Source: Octopus sinensis
Taxonomy: Eukaryota
NCBI RefSeq assembly: GCF_006345805.1
Contig: NC_043004.1
Span: forward strand, 83,266,001 to 83,330,000
Reading direction: 5' to 3'
Length of the DNA stretch: 64,000 nucleotides
Shown here: one piece after another, positions 5,630 to 38,399 of the stretch
Layout: every line of letters starts with the position of its first letter
Numbering within the stretch: the stretch's first letter is position 1
The notes under the pieces: model-generated
The model's input: only the letters and a program-made list of their open reading frames with translations
The model's database searches: none
Told to the model about the DNA's origin: nothing
Translations under genes and position numbers: made by a program

Positions 5630-5689
5630 TCATACTAAATTTTTGCGCTGCAGACAGTACACAGTGAAGGTCATCATAAAACTGATAAT
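5630..5689 (-). CDS. GRL-A exon 4 (last), TM7b: IISFMMTFTVYCLQRKNLV*
   Basis: Acceptor cttattcttatttgttttctcttattcag|ATT, phase 0. TF-TVYCL-Q fits the Gr/GRL TYhhhhhQF motif. Confidence 0.85.
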   Translation of the reverse strand: MISFMMTFTVYCLQRKNLV

Positions 5690-6165
5690 CTGAATAAGAG
5701 AAAACAAATAAGAATAAGAAAAGCAACGACATTGACATGACTTTTTAAAATGCTTAGCGGTATTTAGTCTGCTTTCACGTTCTGAGTTCAAATTCCGCCG
5801 AGGTCAACTTTACCTTTCATCTTTTCACACACACATAAACGCACACATGCATATACACATACACGCATACATGCACACCGCTCTGAAAAAGGTAACATAC
5901 TCATGCACATGCACACATGGAAACACATACAGCGCCGTGACCAATAAACCACACACGCATGCACTCGTACATGCACACGCATACCCACATACACACGAAA
6001 ACCACCCTAACAAGCACAACACACACATACACACGCACACATGCATACCGCCTTAACAAATGTAACACACACACATACACATGCACACACGCACATGGAC
6101 ACACAGCGCCTCGACTCATATAACACATAAACTCACATACAAACTTACAGACGTACGCAATCTGC

Positions 6166-6840
6166 CTGGACGCGAAATTCGTTTTCCCAAGCGAGTTCCG
6201 GAAGCACGTAATGAACTCATTTGCATACAACCAATCAGAGCTCACCTTGACCTTGTTGTACACCAACAGCTACGAAGAAACAGCCAATCAGATAACGAAG
6301 GATCAGATCCGTTCAGTTCTTATACTATGCCTAGACGCAAAGCCCAACATTACATTCCTGAATGTATTAAAAACAACCAATCTATTGGTAATACGCACTC
6401 GACCAAGACGAAGAACTGTGTTATAAGTTGACCGATCGTCAAGTTATGCCTTATTTTCGAAGGGGACAAGTAATTAGAGATAGATTTGCATCTACACTTA
6501 ATATCGGATTTTGTTAGGGCTCCATATGATAAAGATTTGGTTGGGAAAAGTGTGAGAAGAGGGTGATGTGTGAGCAATCTTCTCCCCTTACTGTTTTATA
6601 AAGTAAACAACAACACAAATAATTACGCAGAGGCCGCCATGGTTGAAGCAAGAACAAGGACAACAAGCATTATTAAACGAGAAAAGAAGCATGGTCGTTC
6701 CTTATCCAAGTGGCCTTATCTTATCGCCCATCATTTGTTATGCGCTCATAAATTACTTTGATAGTTGAGCTCTGATTGGCTGTATACAAACGAGTTCATA
6801 ATTCCGGAACTCACGTGGGAAAAAAAAATTCGCCGCCCAG
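6166..6840. mobile_element. Non-autonomous terminal-inverted-repeat (MITE-like) element inside a CA-rich cryptic satellite
   Basis: Left end ctggacgcgaaattcgttttcccaagcgagttccggaa...ccaatcagagctca matches the reverse complement of 6765-6840 over about 75 bp. No clear target-site duplication. Confidence 0.65.
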
Positions 6841-7409
6841 ATAGTTATAACACACACTGATACACAGACACACATACATATCCATGTGTATGCTCACACA
6901 GCTTTGACCAACACAGTGCACACGCATATAAACATACACACGCATACACACATACGCACACATGCACACCCCACCGACAAACGTAACACATATACACACC
7001 CTCACATGCACGCGCACTGCCCTGACAAATATAACACATGCATACACGGGTACACACATACATACACACGCGCTCACATACACACACACGCATGCACGCA
7101 AATGGAACACCTATATACACGCGCAAAGGTTCACTCTAACAATCACACACATAAACACAATGTGTTAAGTGCCAGTTCTTTTCTATTGAAATATGGAATA
7201 AAAATGCGTCGAATGATATCTAAATTTTATATAAGGCGCATGTGTTACTGTGTGGAAAGTAGCTTGCTTACCAAGCACATGGTTCCGAGTTCAGTCCCAC
7301 AGCATGTCACTTTGGGTAAGTGTCTTTTACTATAGCCTCGGGCTGACCAAAGCCTTGTGACAGGATTTGGTAGATGGAAACTGAAAGATGCCCGTCATAT
7401 ATATGTATG

Positions 7410-7448
<39 letters not shown>

Positions 7449-8571
7449 CCTGCTCGCTTAGCCAGCGGGATGGCGTCATTTGAAGGCTAAAACAATGCGA
7501 AGCGCATTGTGACCAGGATATGTAATCTTTGTAACTCTGAACTTTTCCACATATTGTTCGCCACAGGCCGTTTGGTAAACGGGCTTTTACAGACTGCTTT
7601 TCGATGTCTCCATTGGCGGCGTCATACGTTTCTTACATATAAATGACACCTAAGACAATTAACACCTTGATATCCTAATAAAAGAAAAAAATTTTTGAAA
7701 AAATTTTTGGGGAAAAAAATCCCTGAATAAATTTTGCAAGGGGAAATTACTCCCCTTGGGCGATTGGTCGGTTTTTTAGAAGCAAGGGCAGGAATTATAC
7801 CCCCCTGATTTTTGACGAGGTTAATTTAGACAAGCAGGCCACTGACGGACACACGAACACAGAATTATTTCAGCCGCCTGACCGGCTCTTTTCAGCAGTG
7901 CTCACTATCTGCGCCCCCTCGCCACATACGGCCACGCATACATAGGCTTGCATACACCACAATGCATGTAGGTAGGTAGTTTCTTTTCTCGCACCTAAAT
8001 AAGACACCCTGAATTCTTAAAATATTCAGAGCATTAACTTTGGTTACACAGAATATCTTCACACCCCTTGTTTTCATTATTTCCTCACCTACCAGATTTG
8101 ACCGCGGCCTGACCTTGATTTATTCCAACGGACTTTTTTGTCGGCCTCCACCAACCCCCCGATTTCAACGTACATTGAGAAACAGTTTACTCCACCCCAT
8201 GGGCTCCTAGGGAGCGTTCTTGTTCGAGTTGCTTGCTGCGCCTTTGTTTTGTTTGGACATCGTAATTCCTGGATTTTCCTGAAGAGAAAGCTGCAATATG
8301 GTATCCTTATTCAATCAGAATTTGGAAATTTGTGGCCTTTGAAACATGTGTAGAATGTAATAAAAGGAATTCTGTAGAATCTTCGTTCAGCTCCATTTCT
8401 TCCATTCACTAATTATATTAAACTTCAATTATCCACGCCAACGCACGGTTGCAACACCCTATGGTCATAACTCCAACGGTGTTTTTTCTGCTGTGATTTT
8501 TGCTACCCAGGTATCGGTTAAACTTTTGAATAATCCGTAAGAAGATAATTCATCTTTCCATTTCAACAAAC

Positions 8572-8648
<77 letters not shown>

Positions 8649-8687
8649 GTGTGTGTGTGTATGTGTGTGTGTGTGTGTGTGTGTGGT

Positions 8688-8725
<38 letters not shown>

Positions 8726-9079
8726 GTTCCCCCACCCAACATCGCTTGACAACCGATGCTGGTGTGTTTCCGTTCCCGTAACTTAGCGGTTCAGCAAAAG
8801 AGACCGATAGAATAAATCATAGGCTTACAAAGAATAAGTCCTGCGGTCGATTTGCTCGACTAAAAGGCGGTGCTCTAGCATGGCCCCAGTCAAGTGACTG
8901 AAACAAGTAAAAGAGTAAAAAGAGTAAAGAGAATAACATAAATCTACGTATGTTTAGGCAGAATACTTTTTCGAAACTGATTTACCATTTCACAATCAAA
9001 CGAAACTGTTCTAAATCGCCCTGTATCATATTCTCCATGATAGGGGTTGCTCTAAATTGGTGTATGTATTGATACTTAC

Positions 9080-9169
9080 AGAGATTAATGTCGAAGGCTT
9101 TATAGTCACATACGCACTCATTTTAATACCCAGTGTAAATAAAGACATCCGCTTTAACACCAGCATCAA
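9080..9169 (-). CDS. GRL-A exon 3: LMLVLKRMSLFTLGIKMSAYVTIKPSTLIS
   Basis: cttgctgtattttcag|TTG ... TCT|gtaagt; 90 nt, phase 0-0. 14/30 aa identical to the paralogous exon at 21738-21827. Confidence 0.9.
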
Positions 9170-9535
9170 CTGAAAATACAGCAAGAAAACATCTCTGTGA
9201 CATATAAATGTACTTAAATCAAGGCAACAAATGCAGACACATGTATGTAGGCCCGTATGCAAAGGGTAGCAGGTAAGCTTCTGTGAACACATACATGTAT
9301 TTATCTATAGGGTTGTAAAATATACTTCTTTATCACACTGCATACGTGCATTTGAATAATTAGTATTAGGTGTGGGTAAGACTGCGTTGTAAGACGGTTG
9401 CTTCTCAGCCATATGGTTACGGCTACAGCCCTGCTACATGTCATCTTCAGCAGGTGTCTTATAATATAGCCTCTGGCCGGCCCACGTCTTGTAAATGGGT
9501 TTCATAGAAGGAAACTAAAGAATCACGTCGTATAT

Positions 9536-9940
9536 AGGCGTAGGAGTGGCTGCGTGATAAGTAGCTTGATTACGAACCACATGGTTCCGAGTTCACTCCC
9601 ACTGCGTCGCACCTTGGGCGAGTGTCTTCTACTAAAGCCTCGGGCCGACCAAAGCATGTGACAGGATTTGGTAGATGGAAACTGAAAGAAGCCCATCGTA
9701 TATATGTATGTATATATAAATATATGTATGTGTGTGTATATGTTTGTGTGTCGGCGTTTGCCCCCACCCCGCTTGACAACCGATGCTGGTATGTTTACGT
9801 CCCCGTAACTTAGCGGTTCGGCAATAGAGACGGATAGGATAAGTACTAGTCTTACAAAGAATAAGTCCTCGGGTCGATTTGCTCGACTAAAGGCGGTGCT
9901 CCAGCATGGCCGCAGTCAAATGATTGAAACACGTAAAAGA
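9536..9940 (+). mobile_element. tRNA-derived SINE, family A (CORE-like centre, internal microsatellite)
   Basis: Head ggcgtaggagtggctgcgtgataagtagcttg...gagttcactccc, then gcaccttgggcgagtgtctt, an internal (TA/TG)n and tail cttgacaaccgatgctgg...gactaaaggcggtgctccagcatggcc. Many partial copies (about 975, 7245, 8725, 19390, 33890, 57060). Confidence 0.85.
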
Positions 9941-10303
9941 GTATATGCGTATGTGCGTGTCTATATGTGTGTATGTATGTACGTTCGTTTGCGTGTGTGT
10001 TTGTGTGCTTGTCTGTGTGTATGTATGTGTCGTGGTGGGATGTTTGTGTGTGTTGGTGTGTTCGATTGTCCCCACTACATCTTGTCAACAGGTGATGGCT
10101 TGTTTATGTCACCGTTGCTTAGCCGTTCGGCAAAAAGGGGCCGATAGAATAAGTAACACACTTAAAGAATAAGTACAGTGGTTGATGCCGTCGATTGAAA
10201 AATCTGCAAAGTGGTGCCCCAGGATGGCCACTATCTTATACTGAAACGACTAAAATAAAAATAAGCAAATCGAGTAGAGACGCGTCTTTGAAACAAAACT
10301 TAC

Positions 10304-10372
10304 CTTTAATTTAAAATCAGGTATTTTAAAGCCTTGTTTAATATTGAACATACTTCTACGTACTTCAGTTAT
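10304..10372 (-). CDS. GRL-A exon 2: ITEVRRSMFNIKQGFKIPDFKLK
   Basis: tatttattttgcag|ATA ... AAG|gtaagt; 69 nt, phase 0-0, stop-free. Not in the ORF track. Confidence 0.85.
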
Positions 10373-10489
10373 CTGCAAAATAAATATCAAGGCTTATGTA
10401 AAAGATAACCACATACTTGTTATTACTGAAAATTCGTATATTTAACAATAACATTGTAAGAATATTTATTATAACAGAAACGTACGTTA

Positions 10490-10635
10490 TTTACATTATT
10501 TACATTTGACGGATATTTGCTCTCATCTTGTTTGTTGTTACCTAAACGTTTCGCCTGATATATCTACCAGCCTTCATCAGATGTCTTGGGGAAATTTCGA
10601 ACCTGGGTTCTCAGTCCTAAGGTATTTTTCGACGT
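10490..10635 (-). mobile_element. Penelope-like-derived repeat with a hammerhead-like core (family H1)
   Basis: Minus strand gacatCTGATGAaggctggtagatatatcaggcGAAAcgtt. Inverted relative to the copy at 11195-11380. Confidence 0.65.
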
Positions 10636-10652
10636 TGTTATTATTATCATTG

Positions 10653-10741
<89 letters not shown>

Positions 10742-10750
10742 GCTACTACT
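10636..10750. repeat. (TTA)n-(CTA)n microsatellite
   Basis: Direct inspection. Confidence 0.95.
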
Positions 10751-10751
10751 T

Positions 10752-11050
10752 GTGGAGGTGCAATGGCCCAGTGGTTAGGGCAGCGGACTCGCGGTCGGAG
10801 GATCGCAGTTTCGATTCCCAGACCGGGCGTTGCGTGTGTTTATTGAGCGAAAATACCTAAAGCTCCACGAGGCCCCGACAGGAGGTGATGGCGACCCCTG
10901 TTGTACACTTTCGCCCCAACTTTCTCTCACTCTTTCTTCCTGTTTCTTCGGTAACGCTGCGATGGACTGGCGTCCCGTCCAGCTGGGGGGAACACATACG
11001 CCACAGAAACCGAAAACCGGTCCCGTGAGCCTGGCTTGAAAAGGGCGCAT
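10752..11050 (+). mobile_element. tRNA-derived SINE, family C (central domain resembling V/Meta-type SINEs)
   Basis: A box tggcccagtgg, B box gtttcgattcc, and gcgatggactggcgtcccgtccag...gaaaccg. Second copy on the minus strand at 56190-56455. Confidence 0.75.
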
Positions 11051-11113
11051 AAATAAAAATAAAATTATTATTATTATCATCATCATTATTATTACTATTA
11101 TTATTATTATTAT

Positions 11114-11190
11114 TCAGGTCACTACCTGGGATCGAACTCGGAATCTTGGGGTTAGTAGACCGCGCTCTTAACCACTACGCCATATGCCCG
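11114..11190 (-). mobile_element. Short tRNA-derived retroposon (tRNA head plus (AAT)n tail)
   Basis: gggcatatggcgtagtggttaagagcgcggtctactaaccccaagattccgagttcgatcccagg has A and B boxes, but its acceptor and T stems are mispaired. (aat)n follows. Confidence 0.65.
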
Positions 11191-11194
11191 TGGA

Positions 11195-11380
11195 CATCAA
11201 AACAAAAGACCTTAGGAATGAGAACTCTTGTTCGAAATTTCCTCAAGACACCTGATGATGGCTGAAGGATATATCAGACGAAACGTTGTGTTAACAGCAG
11301 ACAAGATGAGGACAGATATCCGTCAAATGTAAATCATGTAAATAATGTACATAATTCTTCATCTCTTAAATAAAGAACAC
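11195..11380 (+). mobile_element. Penelope-like-derived repeat with a type-I hammerhead motif at 11247-11292 (family H1)
   Basis: gacac CTGATGA t ggctga-aggatata-tcagac GAAA cgtt gtgtt: stem I gacac/gtgtt and a palindromic ACGT stem III. A 3' fragment of the same family lies at about 40280-40330. Confidence 0.7.
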
Positions 11381-11939
11381 AAACGTAGTTATGGAAAAGA
11401 ATATCTCCAATGCTTCAGTATCAATTGTTAATTTTATAACAGAAAATAAACGTCGAAGTTTGTTAATAGGTCATAAGCAACTCAAAATTTATAAATTTGA
11501 AACATGAGAACATCCACCCTAAATGTCATAGAGAACAGCGCTCGATACGGATATTCTTGACTTGAACTTTAAAAGACCGGAAGTTGGTGAAAAGAAATGA
11601 AAAAAAAGTAAAGCAGAAAACATTCGTCTTCTCTTCCGTTTTACACAACGTCAAGGGAACACTTATATATATGTATGTATATATGTCATTATTCAGTTTT
11701 ATTTCAAAATTTCTGGCCAAGGGAGAAAGAACCGGGTTCTAGCCTACATCCAAGGCATCTTCATTGGAATTTCAATATTAAAAAAAAGGGTATTTTTGTA
11801 TCTATATATATATGTATGTAAGTGTATATGTATGTATGGATATGTGCAGATTTGTATGTTTTGTTTTATGTATGTATGCGCAGGCATATAGTTGCATATC
11901 TAGACATATTCATATATATTTAAATGATAATGTTCCGGA

Positions 11940-12480
11940 AAGTTTTACAGACAAAGCTGTTATATTTTAACCAGCTTCAGATTCATGTTATGAACCGGAT
12001 ATTTTCCTTCAAAGCACAAAATTGAATAATTTAGATAGATTTGTGTATCTTGGAATTATGCAGGATAGTATTTGATACGGCAGATCATCATCAAAAAACA
12101 TCTTAGGATTTCAAAAATCTTGAAGGGCGAGTTTTGTCTAATAGAAATATCTGTGAACAGAGCTTGTGTGCTTTCATCTCTTCGCTACTTATGTGAAACA
12201 TGGGTAGTATATAAGAATCAACTCAAATTATTAAAGCAATTTCAGCAGCGATGTTTGCAGCCTAAACAGAAAAATCAAATGGGTGCCCAAAGTATCAGAT
12301 TCTGAAGTACTTGCGTGTGCTAGTGTGGATGACATTGATACACAAATTCATTGACAAAAGCTCCGGTGGACTGGTCATCTAATAAAGGAATCAGATCAAC
12401 GGATGCCCAGATGACTGTAATATGGTCAAATAAAAGGAGCAAAGGGGCTGCAATGGAAACCAAAATTCTGTTACAAATGT
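11940..12480 (+). mobile_element. Decayed RTE-clade LINE, C-terminal region
   Basis: RACVLSSLRYLCETWVVYKNQLKLLKQFQQRCL...IKWVPKVSDSEVL...KLRWTGHL...QRMPR, with stops and frameshifts. Confidence 0.75.
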
Positions 12481-12520
12481 TTAATAATTAGTTCTCAAAA
12501 GGACATCAACATGTATATCA

Positions 12521-12608
<88 letters not shown>

Positions 12609-12649
12609 TGTATGTGTGTGTGTATGTGTGTGCGTGCGTAGGTAGAGTT

Positions 12650-12830
12650 CACAAAAAAAGCAAAAGACGATGATCGGTGGTGTAGACAACAAACAGATGT
12701 ATTAGTTTAACGATCAGGAAGAGAAAAAGTCTTTAACGTTTCGAGCCTATGCTCCTCCACAGAAAGAAATACAGAAAGAAACAGGAAGAGAAAATAAATA
12801 ATGTATAGTGGCTAGCGATCTATCATAGCG
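12650..12830 (-). mobile_element. Repeat with a variant hammerhead-like motif at 12729-12771 (family H2)
   Basis: Minus strand tcttt CTGTGGA g gagc-atag-gctc GAAA cgtt aaaga. Second copy at 38400-38590. Confidence 0.55.
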
Positions 12831-12974
12831 AATAACAGACAAAGGGGTCACAGAGGAGAGCTAGGAATAAAGGGATACAATAAAGTAGTGGTGATCCCAA
12901 AACGAAGGTGCGCGTGCTTGTGCATAAAAGAGCATGAATTTGCGTGTGGAGGAGGACAGGTTGCCTTCACGTGT

Positions 12975-13212
12975 GCATTTGTGGATAGATAGATAGATAC
13001 TTACATACATTCATACATACATAGATAAATAGATAGATATATGCATATATAGATACATAGATGGATAGATAGATGCATATATAGATACATAAATGGATAG
13101 ATAGATAGATGCATATATAGATAGATACATACATGCATACATACATACATACATTCATACATATACATACATACATACATACATACATACATACATACAT
13201 ACATACATACAT
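12975..13212. repeat. (ATAG)n/(ATAC)n tetranucleotide array near the start of GRL-A intron 1
   Basis: Direct inspection. Confidence 0.9.
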
Positions 13213-13278
13213 TACATGCGTGTGCGGTTAGCCGATTTTTAACATGATAAATAATTAAATATATGACTTTTTACTTAC

Positions 13279-14301
13279 TGAATCATGCAATTTTAATCCT
13301 TTTCTAATAACATATATAGTTAAAATTCCAACCAAGTGCGTTAAAATCAACACATAAGAGTCATCAATGTGTAGTTTACGATTGGCGATGTAACCGAAGA
13401 TAAGGCCGCAACTTGAAATAATGAAGGAAAGTACAAAATATCCAAAATAATTCTGGAACAAATCATTCGTCAATTCCAGTAGAGTACAGAGTTCTTGAAA
13501 ATTATCGAAAAACATGGTGAGTTCTTTACCTGTGTTCTCATCATGTGTGCTTTTGTTTTCCGTGTTATTTATTATTCCACTGCTTAGCAAATTGAATTCT
13601 TTTTCCAAAGTGTTTATAACGAAGTAGTGAATTGGTAATAATGTGAAAATAGGCATACGTTTTATGGTGCTTATTATAAAGTGAACTATTAAGCAAATAT
13701 CGCTAAGTTCACTGGTTCGAGACACGGGGTATATGAAGTGATCCATAAATGTATTACTATCCTTGGTGAAAATTGGTAAAATAAATTCAGTAATAAAGAA
13801 AATTCCAAAGAAAAGGAAAATATAAAGATATTTGTAGATTTTCTCGACAAAATCTTTTTCAGATTTAAGTTTCAGATTAGATTCAATACATTTAATTTTG
13901 GTTATTTTATTCAAAATTTTAATATTTTTCTCGGCATTGAATGCAACGCTAAGCCATATGAATATTGCTAAGAATTGCTGAACAGCGATAGATACTCTAA
14001 TATAGTATGCAGTTTTATTTTCGGTAGAATCCAATCCGATATATACGAAGATTTTCACAAATTCTGCTAACATACATATTTCTAGAATGCGACAAATTAT
14101 GTAAAAACATTTTCTCTTTAAATTATATGATTCCCAAAGAGTTAAAGAAATTTTCATATTTATAAGCTGGTGAAACCTTATAAAAAACTGAATAGAATCG
14201 TGTGTGCTTTGGGGATATTGCCCTTCTTTCTGGATATTAGCGGTCCATGAAATGGAAGATGGCTGCACGTTGTGACTGTTTAAAGAATATATTGTACACA
14301 T
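13279..14301 (-). CDS. GRL-A exon 1 (341 aa, TM1-TM6) of a gustatory-receptor-like 7TM chemoreceptor
   Basis: Stop-free 1-kb ORF in very AT-rich DNA with six hydrophobic segments and the Gr-like intracellular pattern FQELCTLLELTNDLF. The ORF-track tail VSKKSYI* is read-through of the donor TCA|gtaagt at 13278. The first ATG is at 14301 (the track start at 14313 is TTG). Confidence 0.85.
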
Positions 14302-14593
14302 TTTATTCAGCAATATTTCTGATAATATATTTCATAAATAAAATGTATTGTGCAAATATGTATACTTTTGATAAGAAATAAAACAAGTTTTCTTTCTCAT
14401 TAGGTGCATTTAATTATTTTGAATATTTAGGCGCTTCTTTCTGAATGAAACTGCTTTTTATAGATAATATATCAACTGATATGCGCCCTTCTTATATCTC
14501 GTGCATTATTTTTTCATGCGTTCGAATGTCGTCTCTAAAATAACACAAATGACGCCGTAAAGTAGAGAATAATTGATGCTAGCTAATTAATTT

Positions 14594-14632
<39 letters not shown>

Positions 14633-15554
14633 TATATATATATATATATCTTATATATATATATATATATATATATGTTCAAAGTCCTTTCAAATATTAT
14701 ATGAAAGCCAACATTAATGATCTGATATAAAATAAGACCATAAAAACGATAAGATGCTTTGATCGCTTCAGAATAGAAAAAAAAAGGATTATTAGAACTT
14801 ACTTCTATCTACTCAATGATCAATACATTAGTTCTTAAATAACTACCTATTGCTGTAAGCTAAGTCAGTTTTCTTTGTGCTTGGCTGTAACATAGTAGAT
14901 GGCATTATAGTATATTACAAGTTGTTTTGTTTTCCTTGAAATATCAATAGAACCTGAACGAGACAGCTATAGGAATCATTCTGAAATTTATGTAGAAATA
15001 AGGTGAAATTACATGATGATTGTATGCCAAGAAACACATCCATGCATATATTATTTGTGAATATTTATTCATCTTTATCAATTTGTATTCTCATTTTAAT
15101 TTATATAGTTAACTGACAAAACCCTTCCTTCTAAATGACTAGTGTATTTCTGCATGATATTAAATTTGGGACATGTATTTTCACAATTTATGTATCAACT
15201 TATGAATAAAATATGATTAAAATCTCATTCTGTTTTTGGTGATGATTTTTTTATATTTTGCGATTACTATTTCACACGTCGATGAGTTCATCTATAACCG
15301 TTCACTAAAGACTGTGCAGCATTTAAGTTTTCTGTCTCATTTTTATGGTGTCGGTCTTTGCATTTTAATTTCTTTCTTTTCTATTGATCATAACTTCATA
15401 CAAATACTTACAATCACTGATATGACCATAATAGAACCATGCAATGTAAACGCATTTAAATTTAAACACTCAATGCTGATATGGAATGCCCCATATTTTG
15501 TTGTCGCTTCCTGTCCGATGCTTCTGTCTCGCTTCAAAATGTCACCTTATGTAT

Positions 15555-15817
15555 ATATATATATGAAAGAAAAAAGATGTTCAGAATGCTGGATGGTTGT
15601 AAAAATATATATTTATTTATATATCACATATTATTACTTCATATTAGCGCTTTCAACTACTCCTGTAGTTTCATCAGAAAATGAGACTGCAGGAGTAGTT
15701 GAAAGCGCTAACATGAAGTAATGTGATATATATGATATATATATTTGTGATATATAAATAAATATATTATTTTACAATCATCCAGCATTCTGAACATCTT
15801 TTTTCTTTCATATATAT
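15555..15817. repeat. Long foldback inverted repeat with a 6-nt loop (15675-15680)
   Basis: ttagcgctttcaactactcctgtagtttcat-cagaaa-atgagactgcaggagtagttgaaagcgctaa. Outer arms gaaagaaaaaagatgttcagaatgctggatg / catccagcattctgaacatcttttttctttc. Confidence 0.9.
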
Positions 15818-17185: not shown

Positions 17186-17236
17186 TCAGATTAAGTTGTA
17201 ATGCAACACGATGGTGCTCGCTAAAGAACCAACAAT
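17186..17236 (-). CDS. GRL-B last exon, TM7b: IVGSLASTIVLHYNLI*
   Basis: Acceptor caattttttttcttttctttag|ATT, phase 0. Aligns without gaps to GRL-A IISFMMTFTVYCLQ (T to S, Q to N). Confidence 0.7.
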   Translation of the reverse strand: MVGSLASTIVLHYNLI

Positions 17237-17302: not shown

Positions 17303-17771
17303 GAGTGAGCGAGCAGAGCATGCCATCAAAGTGACACTGGGGTAAAATATACGAAGCCCAGTATGCCCATCATGACTACCCGTACCCGTGATAAGGGTAC
17401 ACCAGGCACATGCATCACAACCATATGTGCGCGACATGGTGATCTCATATCAAGATAAACAGACACATGACCTTGCAGGTGGAGCCCAGTTAGAATTTTT
17501 CTTCAGATCGAGTAACCCATCCCGCTCAAAAGGGTCCCTGAATAGGGTGTTTAAGGACGTTGAAACGAAACACCCATGTTTCCAAAGGTGAATTATCCAA
17601 CCCCAAAGAATCCCTCTCAACCACATGGCTATGATGCTCCCCCACTACTACTTCTGCTCGTGATCAGAGATGCACATATCGTCAGCCACTAAGGGACATG
17701 CTCACTGGTTAAGGTCAAACAACTGACAAGCAAATCTGTGGTATTGAGCAGAATATTTGCTGTAGCCCATC

Positions 17772-17776
<5 letters not shown>
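17303..17776 (-). mobile_element. ~470-bp non-coding interspersed element associated with (TAA)n arrays, copy 1
   Basis: Closely similar to 53609-54075 in the opposite orientation. Both copies end in ...cactc followed by (AAT)n. Confidence 0.8.
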
Positions 17777-17815
<39 letters not shown>

Positions 17816-17837
17816 GTTATCATCATCATCATCATCA

Positions 17838-17891
<54 letters not shown>

Positions 17892-17947
17892 CATCATCAT
17901 CATCATTATTATTATTATTATTATCATCATCATCATCATTATCATCA

Positions 17948-18038
<91 letters not shown>

Positions 18039-18145
18039 ATTATTATTATCATCATCATCATCATCATCATCATCGTCATCATTATTATTATTATTATATT
18101 ATTATTATTATTATTATTATATTATCATCATCATCATCATCATCA

Positions 18146-18182
<37 letters not shown>

Positions 18183-18194
18183 TTATCATTATCA

Positions 18195-18263
<69 letters not shown>

Positions 18264-18275
18264 TACTACTATTAC

Positions 18276-18311
<36 letters not shown>

Positions 18312-18323
18312 TACTACTATTAC

Positions 18324-18377
<54 letters not shown>

Positions 18378-18480
18378 ATATTATTATTATTATATTATTA
18401 TTATTATTATTATTACTATTACTATTACTATTACTATTACTATTATTATATTATTATTATTATCATTATTATCATTATTA

Positions 18481-18542
<62 letters not shown>
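17777..18542. repeat. ~765-bp compound (TTA)n/(TCA)n/(CTA)n microsatellite
   Basis: Direct inspection; source of the poly-L/I/Y/H ORFs. Confidence 0.95.
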
Positions 18543-18545
<3 letters not shown>

Positions 18546-18680
18546 TAGTTTTATTTTTATAGCGTGCTTTCACTTCACTACCGAGCGCAGCTCTGTGTGC
18601 CTTAGGTATGTGCTGTGATTTGTTGTGATGCTCTGATGGTTATTGTATGGAAAGTGTTCTGCGTAGGATGTGTGCAGTGC
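18543..18680 (-). mobile_element. 5'-truncated 3' end of the R4/Dong-type LINE
   Basis: Near-identical reverse complement of 48927-49064 (TAHILRRTLSIQ* plus 3' UTR), with (TTA)n on both sides. Confidence 0.9.
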
Positions 18681-21737: not shown

Positions 21738-21827
21738 GGTTAGTAATGTCAAAGGAGTTATAGTCATTAACGAACCGATGTTAATCCCCAATGTAGTTGA
21801 AGACATTCGCTTGAACAGCAACAGCAT
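21738..21827 (-). CDS. GRL-B penultimate exon: MLLLFKRMSSTTLGINIGSLMTITPLTLLT
   Basis: ccttgtgtttccag|ATG ... ACC|gtaagt; 90 nt, phase 0-0, same length as GRL-A exon 3. Confidence 0.85.
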
Positions 21828-22411
21828 CTGGAAACACAAGGAAACATCTATGTCACATGTAAATTGACATAAATCAAGTATAACTGTAAATACGTCGTGT
21901 ATGTCTGTATGAATATGTGAAATTTGGTTGATAGTATGTATGATGTTATGACAGTAAGCCAGTGTATTTAAATATTGCATCATGTTATGTAATAGGGTTT
22001 CCAACCCAATATTTCCGTCCTAGTATTTATAAATTTATGCGATTGGAGAGCTACTGCTTTAATGCAAATATACACACACATACATGCATACCTACAAAAA
22101 TCTGCACACCTATCAATGAAGTATATATGAGAATGTCTAGATATGTAACTATATGAATGAAAATATATACAGAAAAACAAAATATACAAGTCTGCACATA
22201 AACATACATACATATATAAATACATGCATCCATCAATCCAACCATCCATCAATCCATACATACATACATACATACATACATTGATCCATCCATCCATCCA
22301 TCCATCCATCCATCCATCCATCCATCCATCCATACATACATACATACATACATACATACATACATACATACATACATACATACATACATACAGATATACA
22401 CACAAAAGTAC

Positions 22412-23342: not shown

Positions 23343-26300
23343 TCTATATATATAAACGGCAGTTTGTCTGTCTGTGTGTCTGTCAGGTTATACCCTCACC
23401 CTGACCACAGCTTTCAACCGATTCTGATGAAACTTGACACACATAGCCCAATGTCATAATTCAAAATTAACGCAGCGAAAATTTTGAAATGTTCCCCCAG
23501 TTCTGAAAAAAATTGATAAATTCGACATGGGGTCGAGAATCTATAAGCTTTTTATATTCAACACATTTTCTTTTGTAGTTTTCGCAACTTGCAATCGATA
23601 TTCACCAAACTCATGGTGAAGCTTAATGTTACCCTAAGAAACTTAATTCTGATGTTAGTTTTCCATGCAATACCTTACCATCAGAAAAAATCGATAAAAT
23701 CATGCCATTTTGGGAAATCGCGTTCAAATTCAAGATGACATATTTTCGACAATATCTTTCACAAATTGGCAGGACTTTTTTTAAAAAATTCACAGCGAGC
23801 ATCATGCCTGCTCAAAGGACTCTATGACCCTTTTATTCCAAATCATATGTGGCACACATAGAAAACCGATTTGTGTATTAAACACAAAACACAGACTGTC
23901 TAGGGGACGCAACTCGACTTTTTAACTCTCTTACACTCCCAAATAACTATCAAACAGCTATCGATAATTCAACCCAAACAATTCCTACCAAGAAGAAATT
24001 ACATTCGAAACTTTACCCCCAACACCGCCACTTCTGCTAATAGCTGCTGCTGCCGCAAGTTATTCGAATGCTTTTTTTGTTTAAACTTTCTCTATAACTA
24101 CCACCCCAAACGTTTTACCTTCAATTTCTGACGTACCCTAAGGGTCCTCGGACGCTACTTGCAAACTCTTGGTTTATTATAAGCCGCTTTTGTCGTGTGC
24201 ACCAAAAAACCTTTTCCATTCGCTTGTTCAGTTTGGTCACTTTTGACTTTTTCGTTGTTGTCACTCACATTGCTGTCCGCTTTCTTGCCGTTTTTGTACA
24301 TTTTCATAAATTTTGGGATACTTACCGACGTGTTCCTTTTTATTACACCTTTGCCAAACACATTGCTATCCACCTAAATGCCACCCAAGAAGAGAAGGAC
24401 GCTCCTCAGTCCTCGGACGACCAAAACATCGGCTGCTAGGGCTACAAGGGCATGCGAAACCCAAGAGGAAACCGCCTTGCGCCTCTCGCAAAAAGCTTTC
24501 CGTTCTGCCGCTGCTCAGGCATCTGAAACTACTAGCGACCGTTCTACCCGACTTGCAAGGGCCACAGGGTCAATGACAATTGTATGCCAGTTTTGCAAAG
24601 CCAAGAAATGACCCGGAGAGTCACCTGGTTTGTGCTGCTCTGGTGGCAAAGTGGACCTGCCACCGCAAAGACTTTCTTCTCCGTCTCCAAACCATGCTTC
24701 AGGATATCAACAGGTACGTCTGCTGCTAGAGGTATGCCTTGGACAGTGCTCCGTCTCCAAACTTCACCGTTGTCATTGATACCGATAAACGACCCCACAG
24801 GGAGCACGAACGCCGTTTCAACGCACCTGCGTGCAACGAAATTGCCGCAGTCATACACGGAGGGCAACACAACAGCCGTGACATAATCATCTCCTCCCGT
24901 GGTAACAGCCTACGCAGGATCAGCGAGACTCACAGATCTTATGACGCGCTTCAGTATCCATTGCTTTTCCCTTATGGGGAAGACGGCAACCACTTCGGAA
25001 TTCCTTTACGGCAGCCCTCCAATCAAACTACTGCGGCATCAAAGACGGTTTCCTGCAGGGCGTTCTACTCATACCGGTTCATGTTCAGGGAGGGTGAGTT
25101 CAACTTATTGCCCCGTTGTCGTCAGCTATTCAACCAGTTCACCGTCGACATGGCCGCCAAAATGGCGGAAAGGCTGCTATACATTAAACTTTATCAGACC
25201 AAACTTCGCTCCGATTCCTACATTCATCTCCGTGACGGCTTGCAACAAGAAAATGACCCTCGCAACATCGGCAAGCCATGCATTCTACCCTCCACCTTCA
25301 CGGGAGGACCGCGATATATGCGTGAAAGGACCCAAGACGCCTTGACCTACGTGCGCATTTACGGCCGGCCGGACCTCTTTATCACCTACACGTGCAATCC
25401 CAACTGCGACGAAATTACTCGCGATCTCCTCCCGGATCAGAATCACACCCATCGACACGACGTCTTTGCTAGGGATTTCCGTCTGAATTTGGGCAAAATG
25501 ATGGATTTGATAGTTAAGGGTCAGATTTTCGGGCATGTCAGGGGCCACATGCTTTCGGTCGAGGGGCAAAAGAGGGGCTTGCCACATGCTCACGTCTTAA
25601 TTTGGCTAATTAATAAAATCGAGACTAATGACATTGACTAATTCATTTCCGCCGAGATTCCTGACCCCGATGAGGACCCCGAACTGTACGAAATTGTCCT
25701 CAAAACCATGGTACACGGGCCTTGTGGACCAAATTACGCCAACACACCATGCTGCAAAATCGGATTAGCCTGCTCAAAGAGATTCCCTAAACGGTTCACT
25801 TTGGAGACTCAAACAGGCGGCGATGGGTATCCGCTGTACAAACGAAGGAGTCCAGCCAATGGAGGCCGCACGATTACGGTTGGGCGACATCAAGTGGACA
25901 ACAGCTACATTGTCCCCTACTGTCCTCTCCTGTCGAAGATATTCAAAGCCCACGTCAACGTTGAGTCCTGCAGCTCCATCAGGTCAATACAATATGTCTG
26001 CAAATATATCAACAAGGGCAGCGATGCTGCCATGTTCGGCATCCAGAGGACCACCCGTCACGACGAAGTGTCCAACTACTTGGCAGGCCGGTACCTCAGC
26101 AGCAATGAAGCGTTTTGGCGAATTTACGGCTTCCCGCTCGATCAGAGACACCCGGCTGTAGTGCAGCTTGCTGTACACTTGGAAAATGGACAGCGGATTT
26201 ACTTCACAGAGCAAACTGCTGCGCAGGTAGCCACCAACCCTAAAGACACAACGTTGACCGGTTTCTTCAAATTATGCCAACGTGATGACTTCGCTCGAAC

Positions 26301-28451
26301 GCTTTTGTACCCCCAGGTCCCATCGTACTTCGTGTGGTATAACAACACCTGAGTTCGACGGAAATCCGGCAAAAACGTCGAAGGCTTCTCACGTGTCAAG
26401 CTTGACTCCTGCCTGGGTCGAGTTTACAACATCCCGCCAAACCAGCTAGAATGCTTCTACCTCCGTCTCCTTCTACATGAGGTCACTGGTCCAACAGGTT
26501 TCGGCAATATACGTACCGTCAATGGATTCTGTGCGACACCTTCAGGGAAGCATGTATGAGACTTGGCCTTCTAGAGGATGACTCCCAGTGGGACACCACT
26601 ATGGCAGAGGGCGCTTTACTGCAAACGCCTTCGGCCCTACGACATCTTTTCGCAATCCTTCTTCAAAAGTGTCAGCTTAATGACCCACTAAGTCTCTGGA
26701 TGAAATACAGGGATGACATGTCGCAGGACCTCTTACGTACGGCTCAGCAACACTGCCCTTCCGTCGAGATCACGTTCAACAACTTCATTTACAATTTTGC
26801 GCTTATTCAACTCGAAGACGCTGTCATCGATATGGGTGGCCCTGCTTTAACGGAGTACGGCCTTACACCACCCACACGTGAACACGCCAATGTTATGTCT
26901 GCTGAATTGTTACGCGAAACTTCCTACTGCATTGAGGAACTGCACCAGTACGTCCAAGATAATGAACCACGACTGCTTCCAGACCAGCGCATAGCCTACA
27001 ACACCATCTGTCAGACAGCAACATGAGCGAATTTACTTCTTTGACGCACCTGGCGGCACTGGCAAAACCTTCGTGACGAAACTAATTCTGGTGGAGGTCA
27101 GACGCAACACGGACATTGCCCTGGCTGTAGCTTCCTCTGGTATCGCGGCCACGTTGCTTCCGGGTGGCAGAACCTCCCACTCTGCCTTCAGACTCCCGCT
27201 CGATCTGGCAAAGTCCGAGTCACCTATCTGCAACATCGTCAAGACCTCAGAACAGGCCGACATTCTGCGAAGATGAAAACTCATCTTATGGGACGAGTGC
27301 AATATAGCACACAAAGGTGCCCTTGAGGCACTGGACAGGTCCCTGCAAGACATCAGAGACTCTATGGCCCCATGAGAGGATTGACTTTACTTCTTTCTGG
27401 AGACTTCAGGCAGACTCTACTTGTTATTCCAAAAGGAACCCGTGCCGATGCTGTACGCGCGTGTCTTAAGTCGTCAGCTCTTTGGGCACATGTGCGGCCC
27501 TTGCACCTCCAAATTAACATGCGCGCGCAGTTGAGTGGTGACAGCGGATCCGCTGCATTCTCCAGGGATCTTTTATTGCTCGGTGAAAATAGGATGCCGG
27601 CTGATGCGGATGGCTGCGTTCAATTGGACTCACTTTGCACCACTGTCGACACCCCTGCTAGCTTCCGGGATGCTGTCTTCCACGACCTACAAAACAATTT
27701 ACGCGACCTAAAATGGCTGGCAGGCAGAGCTATTTCGCACCCAAAAATACAACCGTTATCTCCATCAATATCCAGCTACTTGAAGCTATTCCTGGTGATG
27801 TCCAGGTCTACAAATCTATAGATAGGACAGCAGACCCCGCCGAGCTTGCCGATTATCCTGTTGAATTCCTGAATTCACTTGAACCGCCAGGCCTGCCGCC
27901 ACACATCCTGAAGTTAAAAGTCGGTGCGCCCATTATGCTCATCAGGAATATGGTTCCACCTAAACAGGGCAACGGCACACGTCTGGTTGTGAAGCATTTG
28001 GCACCACATTTAATAACGGTCACAATACTTACCGGTTGTGGGAAGGGAGAGGATGTCTTCATTCCACGCATGCACCTTCAACCGTCGGGCGCTGACCTAC
28101 CAATCTACTTCAGGCGTTCTCAGTTTCCTGTTAAACTCTGCTTCGCAATGTCCATCAATAATTCCCAAGGCGAAACGCTACAAGTCGCTGGGTTACATTT
28201 GGGCGAACAGTGCTTCGCCACGGTCAACTCTACGTGGGCTGTTCACGCGTTGGGAGGGACAATGATGTTTTCATGTTTTCGCACAAAGGGACAGCTAGGA
28301 ACATCGTATACACAGAAGTATTCGAGTGAAGAGAAGACATTGCAACCTACACTTGCGCCTTCGTTCCCTAGAGGGAAAGGACTAGATTGGGATTAGTCGT
28401 TGCCTACTAGGGGCGTTTACATACCCGGGCAACGCCGGGCTATGCTGCTAG
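23343..28451 (+). mobile_element. Helitron copy 1 (5.1 kb, internally deleted)
   Basis: A|TC 5' end at 23343. 3' hairpin cccgggcaacgccggg plus CTAG|T at 28448-28451. Colinear with copy 2. Confidence 0.95.
24378..28329 (+). pseudogene. Rep/PIF1-helicase pseudogene of Helitron 1
   Basis: Rep motifs GRPDLFITYTCNP, QKRGLPHAH and KYINKG; helicase motifs DAPGGTGKT, WDEC and FAMSINNSQG. Several frameshifts and stops. Confidence 0.95.
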
Positions 28452-35660: not shown

Positions 35661-35727
35661 GGTGTGTTACTATAACAGTGGGTTACTTGAAGTTATATGT
35701 TATAGTAGAACTCCACCTTTGGTGAAG

Positions 35728-36714
35728 ATGATGAAAGTAAACATCCCTTGCTTGATGGGTTATATTTTAGCAATTATCGTGCTGGTCGTCGTTGTTAGAG
35801 GTAAAAAGGACACTGAAATTCCCAAAAAGTCGCAAATTCAGAAATGTATGGTGTTGGCTCGGAAGCGAAGACTTAAAGGTCTCGATAAGGATGAAGGAAA
35901 AAGATTAGTTTGTAAACCGTCATATAACCTGACCATTGATTGTATAATAAAAAACAGCTTAAAGTCCAAGCATCCGTTAGACATTTCAGTGCGAAATTCC
36001 ACAAGTATGGCACGTTGGAAAGAATCTAACAAGTATCTGTGTAACCAGTATCGCCGTGTAAATGAAGACAAGGAGCCATGCGCAAGCAGTTCAATGGAAT
36101 GTATGAAGATTTTAAACATGCATATTTATACCTGGTGTCGCCCGGATACTCGCTGCTTCTATGAAAAAATACATAATTGCAGTGAATTCGTCGCTATAAT
36201 TTGGGCGAAATACGTCCTTTTGGGCAAAAGCAACGTTTGTATTGTATCGGATCAATATTTTCAGTTATATCCATTATATGGACCTGAATTAAAATGTTAT
36301 CCGATTACCAATGTAGATGTTCACGCGACATTGGATAGGGTATACAGAGATTTCTGCGCACGTTTTCAGTTTCGCGGAACCCTTGAATGTATACGTGATG
36401 AAGTTGGGAAATTATCTTCTGCGGATTTAGATGATAATAAATCTGATTATATCCTTAAAGCTGTGAAATTTGCACGTGGCCGGAATAGTCTCTGTAAGAA
36501 TCTGAAGGATTTGCCGGCAAAAACTTGCAATATTATTCAAGAAGATATTACAAAAACTTGCCTGAAGAAGCTGTATTACACACATCGGAAACAAGAAAAA
36601 TCTTTATCGGATTCGGTAGAAATATATGCAAAATGCATACAAAAGCAATACAAGCAGTGTGACGTGAACTTAGCTCGACTTATTGGAAAAAACATTCGAT
36701 CATATAACAAGTAG
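35728..36714 (+). CDS. Intronless secreted cysteine-rich protein (328 aa), family unknown
   Basis: Signal peptide MMKVNIPCLMGYILAIIVLVVVVRG, 18 Cys in the mature chain, an RKRR site, and a 987-nt intact ORF. The track start at 35662 is GTG. Confidence 0.85.
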   Translation: MMKVNIPCLMGYILAIIVLVVVVRGKKDTEIPKKSQIQKCMVLARKRRLKGLDKDEGKRLVCKPSYNLTIDCIIKNSLKSKHPLDISVRNSTSMARWKESNKYLCNQYRRVNEDKEPCASSSMECMKILNMHIYTWCRPDTRCFYEKIHNCSEFVAIIWAKYVLLGKSNVCIVSDQYFQLYPLYGPELKCYPITNVDVHATLDRVYRDFCARFQFRGTLECIRDEVGKLSSADLDDNKSDYILKAVKFARGRNSLCKNLKDLPAKTCNIIQEDITKTCLKKLYYTHRKQEKSLSDSVEIYAKCIQKQYKQCDVNLARLIGKNIRSYNK

Positions 36715-38345: not shown

Positions 38346-38399
38346 ATATGTTATTTTGGGTATGTATGTATGTTGTATATATATAGCTATACATATATA

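What the first reader, a model, noticed from the sequence alone, without database searches (positions are those of the whole stretch)
5630..14301. Complete four-exon gustatory-receptor-like (7TM ion channel) gene hidden from the ORF track
Seen: the 352-aa ORF reads through a TCA|GTAAGT donor. Three small phase-0 exons (69, 90 and 60 nt) with canonical sites complete a 413-aa protein with about seven hydrophobic segments. It ends ...LGIKMSAYVTIKPSTLIS|IISFMMTFTVYCLQ, and AATAAA follows the stop. Known: insect Gr and animal GRL genes have a large first exon, conserved C-terminal phase-0 introns and a TM7 TYhhhhhQF motif, and they form ligand-gated channels rather than GPCRs. Inference: this is a highly diverged GRL. 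Octopus contact chemosensation is best known through nAChR-derived chemotactile receptors, so an intact GRL lineage could be a second, little-described chemoreceptor system. TY to TF and QF to QR in the pore-lining helix may alter gating or selectivity.
Basis: partly seen in the sequence, partly recalled or inferred. Interest (0 to 1): 0.92.

Follow-up and report, generated by a model that had tools for sequence, protein, structure and literature searches.

The report
Unannotated octopus gustatory-receptor-like channel gene
The window holds an intact four-exon gene of the insect-type gustatory receptor (GR/GRL) ion-channel family that is missing from the protein collections searched; related octopus genes are already in public databases, so it is a new member of a known family and its function is untested.

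Summary
Minus-strand exons 14301-13279, 10372-10304, 9169-9080 and 5689-5630 are all phase 0. They have three GTAAGT donors and polypyrimidine-CAG acceptors. They splice to a 413-aa protein with seven hydrophobic segments, a TGA stop and an AATAAA 48 nt downstream.

The GRL reading is supported by four independent lines:
- **Sequence.** The protein matches three Octopus proteins at E 2e-13 to 1e-6 against 1.84 billion representatives. All three pass Pfam 7tm_7's curated cut-off. One is UniProt A0A0L8FL56, named 'Gustatory receptor'.
[quoted passage not shown] This is the canonical GR/GRL structure, and the O. sinensis relative has the same 69/90-nt exons.
- **Fold.** The top 21 PDB matches of an AlphaFold model (pLDDT 69) are all insect OR/GR/Orco channels. 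GPCRs score TM below 0.2.
- **TM7 motif.** TFTVYCLQR fits TYhhhhhQF at T, Y-to-F and Q. Arg sits where BmGr9 has its gate Phe.

The protein itself gets no direct Pfam hit. Expression, channel activity and a chemosensory role are untested. Its closest relative, in another octopod dataset, is a pseudogene. Novelty is modest: mollusc GRLs have been known since 2015 and octopus ones are already catalogued.

The parts
13279..14301 (-). Exon 1 (1023 nt, 341 codons): start ATG at 14301-14299. It encodes the N-terminus and TM1-TM6 and ends at a phase-0 donor TCA|GTAAGT.
   Evidence: The N-terminus MxxI(Y/F/V)(S/T)(L/I) aligns with the starts of P0003 and P0006. phmmer hits to P0003-P0009 cover this exon. 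The homologous GTAAGT donor is seen in L003, L006 and L011.
10373..13278 (-). Intron 1 (2906 nt, phase 0), rich in microsatellites and interspersed repeats.
10304..10372 (-). Exon 2 (69 nt, 23 codons, ITEVRRSMFNIKQGFKIPDFKLK): the cytoplasmic extension after TM6.
   Evidence: It is the only one of 16 candidates with consensus sites. It has the same 69-nt size and phase as O. sinensis LOC118764606 and as the canonical GR structure (PMC13388675). Shuffle p is about 0.006-0.015.
9170..10303 (-). Intron 2 (1134 nt, phase 0).
9080..9169 (-). Exon 3 (90 nt, 30 codons, LMLVLKRMSLFTLGIKMSAYVTIKPSTLIS): helix 7a, a loop and the start of TM7b.
   Evidence: The 90-nt size and phase match O. sinensis and the canonical GR structure. 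Shuffle p < 5e-5. It ranks second of 2655 six-frame fragments with an HMM built only from the three Octopus proteins.
5690..9079 (-). Intron 3 (3390 nt, phase 0), containing SINE-like repeats and CA/TG microsatellites.
5630..5689 (-). Exon 4 coding part (57 nt plus TGA at 5632-5630; IISFMMTFTVYCLQRKNLV*): TM7b, the predicted pore helix.
   Evidence: Shuffle p is about 3-7e-4 against O. sinensis terminal exons.
5645..5671 (-). TM7 signature T401-F402-TVYCL-Q408-R409, the counterpart of TYhhhhhQF.
   Evidence: This is the only T[YF]h5Q match on the minus strand below 14.4 kb. The paralogues have TYVIVVLQT and TYILVVIQT. The roles of Q and F in BmGr9 come from PMC11062906.
5577..5582 (-). AATAAA polyadenylation signal, 48 nt after the stop codon.
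   Evidence: read directly. Its use is inferred.
14456..14462 (-). TATAAAA, a candidate core-promoter element about 155 nt upstream of the ATG.
   Evidence: read directly. Function is inferred only.

Best explanation
This is an intact protein-coding gene of the gustatory receptor / gustatory-receptor-like family (Pfam 7tm_7, 7TMIC superfamily). It is absent from the protein collections searched. The genome is probably an octopod's. The gene belongs to a small, fast-diverging octopod GRL family. It keeps the ancestral four-exon layout: a long first exon encoding TM1-6, then 69-nt, 90-nt and short terminal exons, all joined by phase-0 introns.

By analogy with solved insect GRs and ORs, the 413-aa product is predicted to insert with its N-terminus inside the cell. 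It would assemble into a tetramer. The cytoplasmic extensions of TM4-6 plus helix 7a would form the anchor domain, and TM7b (exon 4) would line a central pore. A ligand pocket within each subunit's extracellular half would couple to TM7b. Q408 corresponds to the glutamine that lines the open pore in BmGr9. The position of the hydrophobic gate Phe is occupied by Arg409, so gating or ion selectivity probably differs from insect GRs.

Shown here: the gene model, family homology, fold class and motif. Inferred: topology, tetramer, channel activity, ligand gating and any sensory role.
For: - Gene model. Exon sizes and phases are identical to O. sinensis LOC118764606 and to the canonical GR/GRL structure (PMC13388675).
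- Homology: a phmmer search of 1.84e9 representatives gave P0004 at E 2.2e-13, P0005 at 1.1e-10 and P0008 at 1.4e-6, aligned through to residues 410-412. These three pass the 7tm_7 gathering score of 26.6 bits with 35.0, 31.7 and 27.4 bits. They are UniProt A0A0L8FL56 'Gustatory receptor' (O. bimaculoides) and XP_036361416.1 / XP_036361419.1 (O. sinensis).
- Fold: an AlphaFold2 model with a 10-sequence alignment has pLDDT 69.3 and pTM 0.65. Its long TM4, TM5 and TM6 helices and split helix 7a/7b match the family architecture. The top 21 Foldseek PDB hits are all insect OR/GR/Orco, with probability 1.00 and TM 0.44-0.64. The next hits are GPCRs with TM below 0.2.
- Topology: K+R counts are 8 and 11 in the TM2-3 and TM6-7 loops, against 0, 2, 2 and 1 in the predicted external loops and tail.
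- Intactness: 413 codons are open in DNA of about 33-40% G+C (33-36% across exons 1-2, up to about 40% at exons 3-4). All six splice sites are consensus.
- Constraint: dN/dS is about 0.54 against a relative that is itself a pseudogene.
Against: - The protein itself gives no Pfam hit, even at E <= 10, either whole or as its C-terminal half. It also gives no GR hit in PDB sequence searches. Membership therefore rests on pairwise links, gene structure and a medium-confidence model built from only 10 sequences.
- No transcript evidence could be consulted.
- The nearest relative found (L002, 47% identity) has three in-frame stops and no start codon. This sub-lineage therefore does decay.
- The signature's last residue is Arg rather than Phe. 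In BmGr9, changing the gate Phe or the Gln to Ala abolished activity (PMC11062906).
Confidence: 0.9

Rival explanations
1. It is a GRL-family sequence that is no longer functional: a young, still-open pseudogene or a never-expressed duplicate in a birth-and-death chemoreceptor family.
For: The closest relative (L002) is a pseudogene with three in-frame stops and a lost ATG. dN/dS of 0.54 is only mildly constrained. The gate Phe is replaced by Arg and Tyr by Phe. No gene model for it exists in the collections searched. A probable orphan remnant of another GRL gene lies just upstream.
Against: The 413-codon frame is open in AT-rich DNA. All three donors are perfect GTAAGT and all acceptors are good. 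The start codon, stop and AATAAA are intact. A dN/dS below 1 against a neutrally evolving partner implies constraint on this lineage.
Confidence: 0.2
2. It is a functional GRL that is not an external chemoreceptor. It could be a developmental, internal-nutrient, thermal or light/redox sensor, as known for Nematostella Grl1, Drosophila Gr43a and Gr28b(D), and C. elegans LITE-1/GUR-3.
For: No non-arthropod GRL has a proven external chemosensory role (my own knowledge; Saina 2015 is cited in PMC7746228). GR28b(D) is a thermosensor (PMC11526382). The octopod family appears small: at least four distinct first exons turn up in one set of related sequencing runs, and P0006 may be a fifth. O. bimaculoides by contrast has up to 26 chemotactile receptors.
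Against: Nothing here discriminates between these roles. Rapid divergence (about 20-25% identity between paralogues) and pseudogenisation are more typical of environmental receptors.
Confidence: 0.3
3. It is some other kind of multi-pass membrane protein, such as a GPCR or transporter, and the GRL resemblance is coincidental.
For: The protein gives no direct Pfam or PDB sequence hit.
Against: Foldseek places 21 OR/GR/Orco structures first, and GPCRs and transporters have TM below 0.2. Pairwise E-values to 7tm_7-positive proteins reach 2e-13. The gene structure matches the family exactly.
Confidence: 0.02

Closest known systems
Octopus GRLs already in databases: O. sinensis LOC118764606 (XP_036361416.1, 408 aa), LOC118764607 (XP_036361419.1) and O. 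bimaculoides A0A0L8FL56 ('Gustatory receptor')
   Same: They have the same four-exon layout, with 69- and 90-nt phase-0 exons. They are collinear over the whole length. They carry a TM7 T-(Y/F)-h5-Q motif with a non-Phe last position.
   Different: Identity is only about 19-24%. Those proteins pass Pfam 7tm_7 and this one does not. They have TY...QT where this gene has TF...QR. In the O. sinensis locus two long first exons precede one set of exons 2-4; here only one first exon is visible.
Insect gustatory receptors with solved structures (BmGr9, DmGr43a, DmGr64a) and ORs/Orco
   Same: Predicted fold. Canonical gene structure. TM7 signature with the conserved pore-lining Gln. Predicted inside-N topology.
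   Different: Sequence identity in structural alignments is 10-14%. The hydrophobic gate Phe (F444 in BmGr9) is Arg here. No ligand, tetramer or conductance has been shown.
Non-arthropod animal GRLs (Robertson 2015; Saina 2015; e.g. SpurGRL1, Nematostella Grl1, gastropod and bivalve GRLs)
   Same: It is a member of the same animal-wide family, defined by 7 TMs, the TM7 motif and conserved 3' phase-0 introns (PMC7746228). A Y-to-F variant also occurs in SpurGRL1.
   Different: It comes from a cephalopod, and I found no paper analysing cephalopod GRLs in the library searched. I made no direct sequence comparison with those proteins.
Octopus chemotactile receptors (nAChR-derived CRs)
   Same: They are candidate ionotropic sensory receptors in the same animals (PMC11526382).
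   Different: They have an unrelated pentameric Cys-loop fold. Their function and sucker expression are proven, and neither is known for this gene.

Membership tests
GR/GRL (Pfam 7tm_7, PF08395; 7TMIC superfamily) | Detectable sequence homology to established members, either by a direct profile hit or by a significant match to proteins that pass the profile's curated threshold | tested here: met
   There is no direct hit: hmmscan of the whole protein and of its C-terminal half finds no 7tm_7 match at E <= 10. The pairwise route succeeds. phmmer against 1.84e9 sequences gives E 2.2e-13, 1.1e-10 and 1.4e-6 to P0004, P0005 and P0008. These score 35.0, 31.7 and 27.4 bits against the 26.6-bit gathering cut-off of 7tm_7.
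GR/GRL (Pfam 7tm_7, PF08395; 7TMIC superfamily) | [quoted passage not shown] | tested here: met
   Exons are 1023, 69, 90 and 60 nt, all phase 0. The definition is quoted. The O. sinensis paralogue has the same sizes.
GR/GRL (Pfam 7tm_7, PF08395; 7TMIC superfamily) | TM7 signature TYhhhhhQF in the terminal exon | tested here: inconclusive
   The gene has T401-F402-TVYCL-Q408-R409. T and Q are kept. Y-to-F is conservative and seen in SpurGRL1. The final F is Arg here and Thr in the two O. sinensis paralogues. The register was assigned by pattern and by alignment to paralogues, not by alignment to a solved GR.
GR/GRL (Pfam 7tm_7, PF08395; 7TMIC superfamily) | Seven transmembrane helices with an intracellular N-terminus | tested here: met
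   This is prediction only. There are seven hydrophobic segments. The AlphaFold helices are 61-90, 96-135, 146-179, 198-249, 255-305, 312-353, 359-377 (7a) and 389-412 (7b). K+R residues are enriched in the TM2-3 loop (8) and TM6-7 loop (11), against 0-2 in the predicted external loops.
GR/GRL (Pfam 7tm_7, PF08395; 7TMIC superfamily) | 7TMIC fold: long TM4-6 forming a cytoplasmic anchor, split TM7a/7b | tested here: met
   Foldseek against PDB ranks only insect OR/GR/Orco chains at positions 1-21, with E 1e-4 to 2e-2, probability 1.00 and TM 0.44-0.64. The model is of medium confidence (pLDDT 69.3, pTM 0.65, 10-sequence alignment).
GR/GRL (Pfam 7tm_7, PF08395; 7TMIC superfamily) | Forms a tetrameric ligand-gated cation channel | not testable with these tools
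   This needs expression, electrophysiology or calcium imaging, and structure determination.
GR/GRL (Pfam 7tm_7, PF08395; 7TMIC superfamily) | Transcribed and correctly spliced, with expression in sensory cells | not testable with these tools
   No RNA-seq resource was available. The related Logan contigs read through the exon-1 donor, so they are genomic rather than spliced.
Rhodopsin-like or other GPCRs | GPCR seven-helix bundle fold | tested here: not met
   The best GPCR matches have TM 0.10-0.18 and probability at most 0.33, and they rank below all 21 7TMIC structures.

The most novel reading that the evidence does not exclude
Octopod GRLs, including this gene, may be working sensory channels with a non-canonical pore gate. 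The Phe that closes insect GR pores is Thr in the O. sinensis paralogues and Arg here. This gene's product would then gate differently or pass different ions (for example anions, or reduced cation flux), or act as a modulatory subunit in heteromers. On this reading it would be a second ionotropic receptor system in octopus, alongside the nAChR-derived chemotactile receptors.
Probability: 0.15. Interest if true: 0.65.

Novelty: new member of a known kind. Interest (0 to 1): 0.35.

Why it matters
Cephalopod chemosensation is currently explained by nAChR-derived chemotactile receptors and by GPCRs. GRLs, the family that dominates insect taste and smell, are recorded for octopus only as automatic database entries. 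I found no study of them in the literature searched.

This gene shows that gene callers miss divergent members, because they stop at the first exon or skip the locus. The octopod GRL repertoire is therefore probably under-counted. A proper census using the long-first-exon plus 69/90-nt 'conserved core' signature would be straightforward.

The non-Phe residues at the gate position (Arg here, Thr in the O. sinensis paralogues) give a concrete handle on how conserved the GR gating mechanism is outside arthropods. The finding itself is otherwise an ordinary family member with no functional data.

Tried and rejected
- Direct Pfam scan of the 413-aa protein and of its C-terminal 213 and 150 residues gave no 7tm_7, Trehalose_recp or 7tm_6 hit.
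- PDB sequence searches with the protein and with the 10-sequence profile returned only chance hits: AlkL, sarcoglycan and nAChR epsilon at E >= 0.03.
- The word-indexed search of 5.8e9 proteins found nothing for the protein, and nothing new for the profile or for P0005.
- Single-sequence AlphaFold gave pLDDT 39 and was unusable.
- Exact look-ups of the window's exon-1 ORF and of the 350-aa ORF found no record, so the source species could not be named. Shared repeats with O. sinensis at 80-90% identity point to an octopod.
- A look-up of P0008 found no record.
- I searched for a second first exon or further GRL genes in the window. tblastn with all homologues found only 14301-13273.
- I searched for exon 2 and exon 1 of the upstream remnant and found none.
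- The HMM hit over 22019-21666 that seemed to extend from exon 3 into exon 2 is alignment run-on into the homologous intron end. It is not an intronless copy.
- P0010 is a repeat protein and a spurious hit.
- Literature searches for cephalopod or octopus GRLs found no dedicated study. Robertson 2015 is not in the library, so I could not check whether it covers cephalopods.

Full report
**1. Observation**

- The longest non-transposon ORF of the window is 13255..14313 (352 aa from a TTG). Its first ATG is at 14301.
- The ORF runs through TCA|GTAAGT at 13279/13278.
- Three small segments follow, each with a pyrimidine-rich CAG acceptor:
  - 10372-10304 (69 nt), ending in a GTAAGT donor.
  - 9169-9080 (90 nt), ending in a GTAAGT donor.
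  - 5689-5630 (60 nt), ending in TGA.
- AATAAA lies at 5582-5577.
- Joined, the exons give 1242 nt in frame and 413 aa, with seven hydrophobic segments.

All junction coordinates in the finding are right.

**2. Is the exon model real?**

I could consult no transcripts, so support comes from comparison.

- *Homologues.* A full HMMER scan of 1.84 billion representative proteins found nine genuine relatives. Three of them (P0004, P0005, P0008) align right through to residues 410-412, that is through exons 2-4.
- *The O. sinensis relative.* P0005 is O. sinensis XP_036361416.1. Mapped on its chromosome (L001), its gene has a long first exon ending ...NLHKN|GTAAGT. Its next exons are 69 nt, 90 nt and 66 nt, all phase 0. 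These are the same sizes and phases as in the window.
- *Exon-by-exon scores.* Aligned ungapped, exon against exon, the window's small exons beat shuffled versions:
  - exon 2: p about 0.006-0.015
  - exon 3: p < 5e-5
  - exon 4: p about 3-7e-4
- *Alternative exon 2 candidates.* Of 16 open AG...GT segments of 66-75 nt between exons 1 and 3, only the proposed exon 2 has consensus sites.
- *Donor conservation.* Three paralogous first exons on short genomic contigs (L003, L006, L011) carry an in-frame GTAAGT at the homologous codon. This is why gene callers extended them with 'VS...'.
- *Start codon.* It is supported by N-terminal alignment with P0003 and P0006.

Exon 2 is the least well supported exon, but it is still the only good candidate.

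**3. What family?**

The protein itself has no Pfam hit, whole or as its C-terminal half. It also has no meaningful PDB sequence hit. Four other lines agree.

- *(a) Pairwise homology.*
  - P0004, P0005 and P0008 match the window protein at E 2.2e-13, 1.1e-10 and 1.4e-6 for the whole library.
  - Each passes the curated threshold of Pfam 7tm_7 ('7tm chemosensory receptor'), with 35.0, 31.7 and 27.4 bits against 26.6. P0005's match covers profile positions 33-366 of 370.
  - P0004 is UniProt A0A0L8FL56_OCTBM, named 'Gustatory receptor'.
- *(b) Gene structure.*
  - Benton and Himmel describe three conserved 3' phase-0 introns and the TYhhhhhQF motif (PMC9998090).
  - The window gene fits this exactly.
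- *(c) Fold.*
  - With the 10-sequence alignment A1, AlphaFold2 gave pLDDT 69.3 and pTM 0.65.
  - The model has very long helices at 198-249, 255-305 and 312-353, and a split last helix at 359-377 and 389-412.
  - Foldseek against the PDB ranked 21 insect OR/GR/Orco chains first: AgamOR28, DmGr43a, MhOR5, Gr64a, BmGr9 and Orco, with probability 1.00 and TM 0.44-0.64.
- The next hits were GPCRs with TM 0.10-0.18.
- *(d) TM7 signature.*
  - The terminal exon encodes T401-F402-TVYCL-Q408-R409.
  - The O. sinensis paralogues have TYVIVVLQT and TYILVVIQT.
  - Y-to-F is regarded as conservative and occurs in SpurGRL1 (PMC7746228).

Basic residues cluster in the TM2-3 and TM6-7 loops, as expected for the family's N-in topology.

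**4. How it probably works**

This section is inference from solved relatives. In BmGr9 the receptor is a tetramer.
- Phe444 of the QF pair forms the closed hydrophobic gate.
- On ligand binding, TM7b rotates so that Gln443 lines the open pore.
- Changing either residue to Ala kills activity (PMC11062906).

The window protein keeps the Gln (Q408) but has Arg409 at the Phe position, and its paralogues have Thr. If the register is right, the canonical hydrophobic gate is absent in the octopus proteins compared here. Four arginines would then sit at the outer mouth of the pore in a homotetramer.

Several outcomes are possible. The gate may be displaced (Leu407 is a candidate), gating energetics may change, selectivity may change, or the protein may act only within heteromers. 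None of this was tested. The register rests on pattern and on alignment to paralogues, not on a structural superposition that I could inspect.

**5. Is it a live gene?**

In favour:
- 413 open codons in DNA of about 33-40% G+C (33-36% across exons 1-2, up to about 40% at exons 3-4).
- Perfect splice sites, an intact start codon, stop codon and poly(A) signal.

Against:
- The closest relative is a 1.9-kb contig from run SRR11869385 (L002), at 47% aa and 70% nt identity. It has three in-frame stops and no ATG.
- Nei-Gojobori dN/dS between the two copies is about 0.54, with dS about 0.66. Since one partner is decaying, this implies some constraint on the window's lineage, but the evidence is weak.

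I put the chance of a non-functional gene at about 0.2.

**6. Family context**

- All the unnamed homologues come from one series of sequencing runs, SRR11869384-94. P0007, P0009 and the pseudogene lie in one and the same run. That genome therefore has at least four distinct GRL first exons, and P0006 (not looked up) may be a fifth.
- Paralogues are only about 20-25% identical. This is typical of birth-and-death receptor families.
- In the O. sinensis locus two long first exons (L001 10001-11014 and 23267-24277, 43% identical) precede one set of exons 2-4.
  - The O. sinensis model uses the distal first exon.
  - The O. bimaculoides protein P0004 corresponds to the proximal one joined to the same 3' exons.
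  - This is the alternative-first-exon arrangement described for insect GRs.
- The window shows only one first exon.

**7. Novelty**

GRLs in molluscs have been known since Robertson 2015 (cited in PMC7746228). Octopus members exist as automatic UniProt and NCBI entries. My searches found no paper that analyses cephalopod GRLs. Reviews of octopus chemosensation discuss chemotactile receptors instead. The library lacks many subscription papers, so the absence is not proof.

The gene is therefore a new, divergent and so far unannotated member of a known family. The Arg at the gate position is the only unusual feature.

**8. Surroundings**

The region is transposon-rich:
- Two Helitron copies (24.7-28.4 kb and 58.5-63.2 kb).
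- A Mos1/mariner fragment.
- LINE reverse-transcriptase fragments.

Interspersed repeats are shared with O. sinensis at 80-90% identity, which supports an octopod origin.

Upstream of the gene, on the same strand, lies a well-preserved paralogous exon 3 at 21828-21738.
- It has 30 codons with cag|...|gtaagt sites and is 47% identical to the gene's exon 3.
- A possible terminal exon follows at 17236-17186 (IVGSLASTIVLHYNLI*, with a strong acceptor).
- I found no matching exon 1 or exon 2 in the window.

**Verdict**

Function is untested. Interest is moderate to low at 0.35.

Noticed in passing
window 21738-21828 (-): A paralogous GRL exon 3 lies upstream of the gene on the same strand. It has 30 codons (MLLLFKRMSSTTLGINIGSLMTITPLTLLT) and intact cag| and |gtaagt sites. 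It is 14/30 identical to the gene's exon 3, and the intron ends are also similar. It is the top hit of an HMM built only from Octopus proteins (E 8e-4).
   Followed up: partly
window 17186-17236 (-): A possible terminal exon for that upstream remnant. It has a 14/14 pyrimidine tract before AG and encodes IVGSLASTIVLHYNLI*, which resembles IFGSLFTYVIVVLQT of O. sinensis but lacks both TY and Q. The score is weak. No exon 1 or exon 2 for it was found anywhere in 21.8-64 kb.
   Followed up: partly
window 15537-15623 (-): A short open fragment ...QPSSILNIFFLSYIYIHK resembles the exon 3/exon 4 junction of Octopus GRLs (RPSSILT|IFGSLFTY) without an intron (HMM E about 0.2). It sits in AT-rich, low-complexity DNA and may be chance.
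   Followed up: no
L001 10001-11014 and 23267-24277; shared exons at 27093-27164, 30160-30258, 37704-37781: The O. sinensis GRL locus has two long first exons (43% identical) upstream of one set of 69/90/66-nt exons. The NCBI model uses the distal first exon. The O. bimaculoides UniProt protein matches the proximal one plus the same 3' exons. This is an alternative-first-exon arrangement like insect Gr28b/Gr39a. The proximal exon's donor reads GCAAGT in O. sinensis.
   Followed up: partly
L002 634-1653: The closest relative of the window's exon 1 comes from run SRR11869385 (47% aa, 70% nt identity). It is a pseudogene with three in-frame stops and Ile in place of the start Met, but no frameshift.
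   Followed up: yes
window 24739-28396 (+) and 58472-63246 (+): Two Helitron-like copies carry Helitron_like_N, PIF1 helicase and Pif1_2B domains. The reading frame is broken into several ORFs in both copies. These stretches have about 50% G+C, against about 35% around them.
   Followed up: partly
window 35662-36714 (+): A 350-aa ORF has an N-terminal hydrophobic segment and many cysteines. It has no Pfam hit and no exact record in the gene-position collection. It is as long as the GRL first exon and remains unexplained.
   Followed up: partly
window 51945-52664 (+), 37883-38386 (+), 46638-47252 (+): A Mos1/mariner transposase fragment (HTH_48 plus partial DDE) and two reverse-transcriptase (RVT_1) fragments.
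   Followed up: partly
window 17738-18562 and 10586-10846: Long trinucleotide and other simple-repeat tracts produce spurious poly-Ile, poly-Leu, poly-Ser and poly-Tyr 'ORFs' of up to 274 aa.
   Followed up: no
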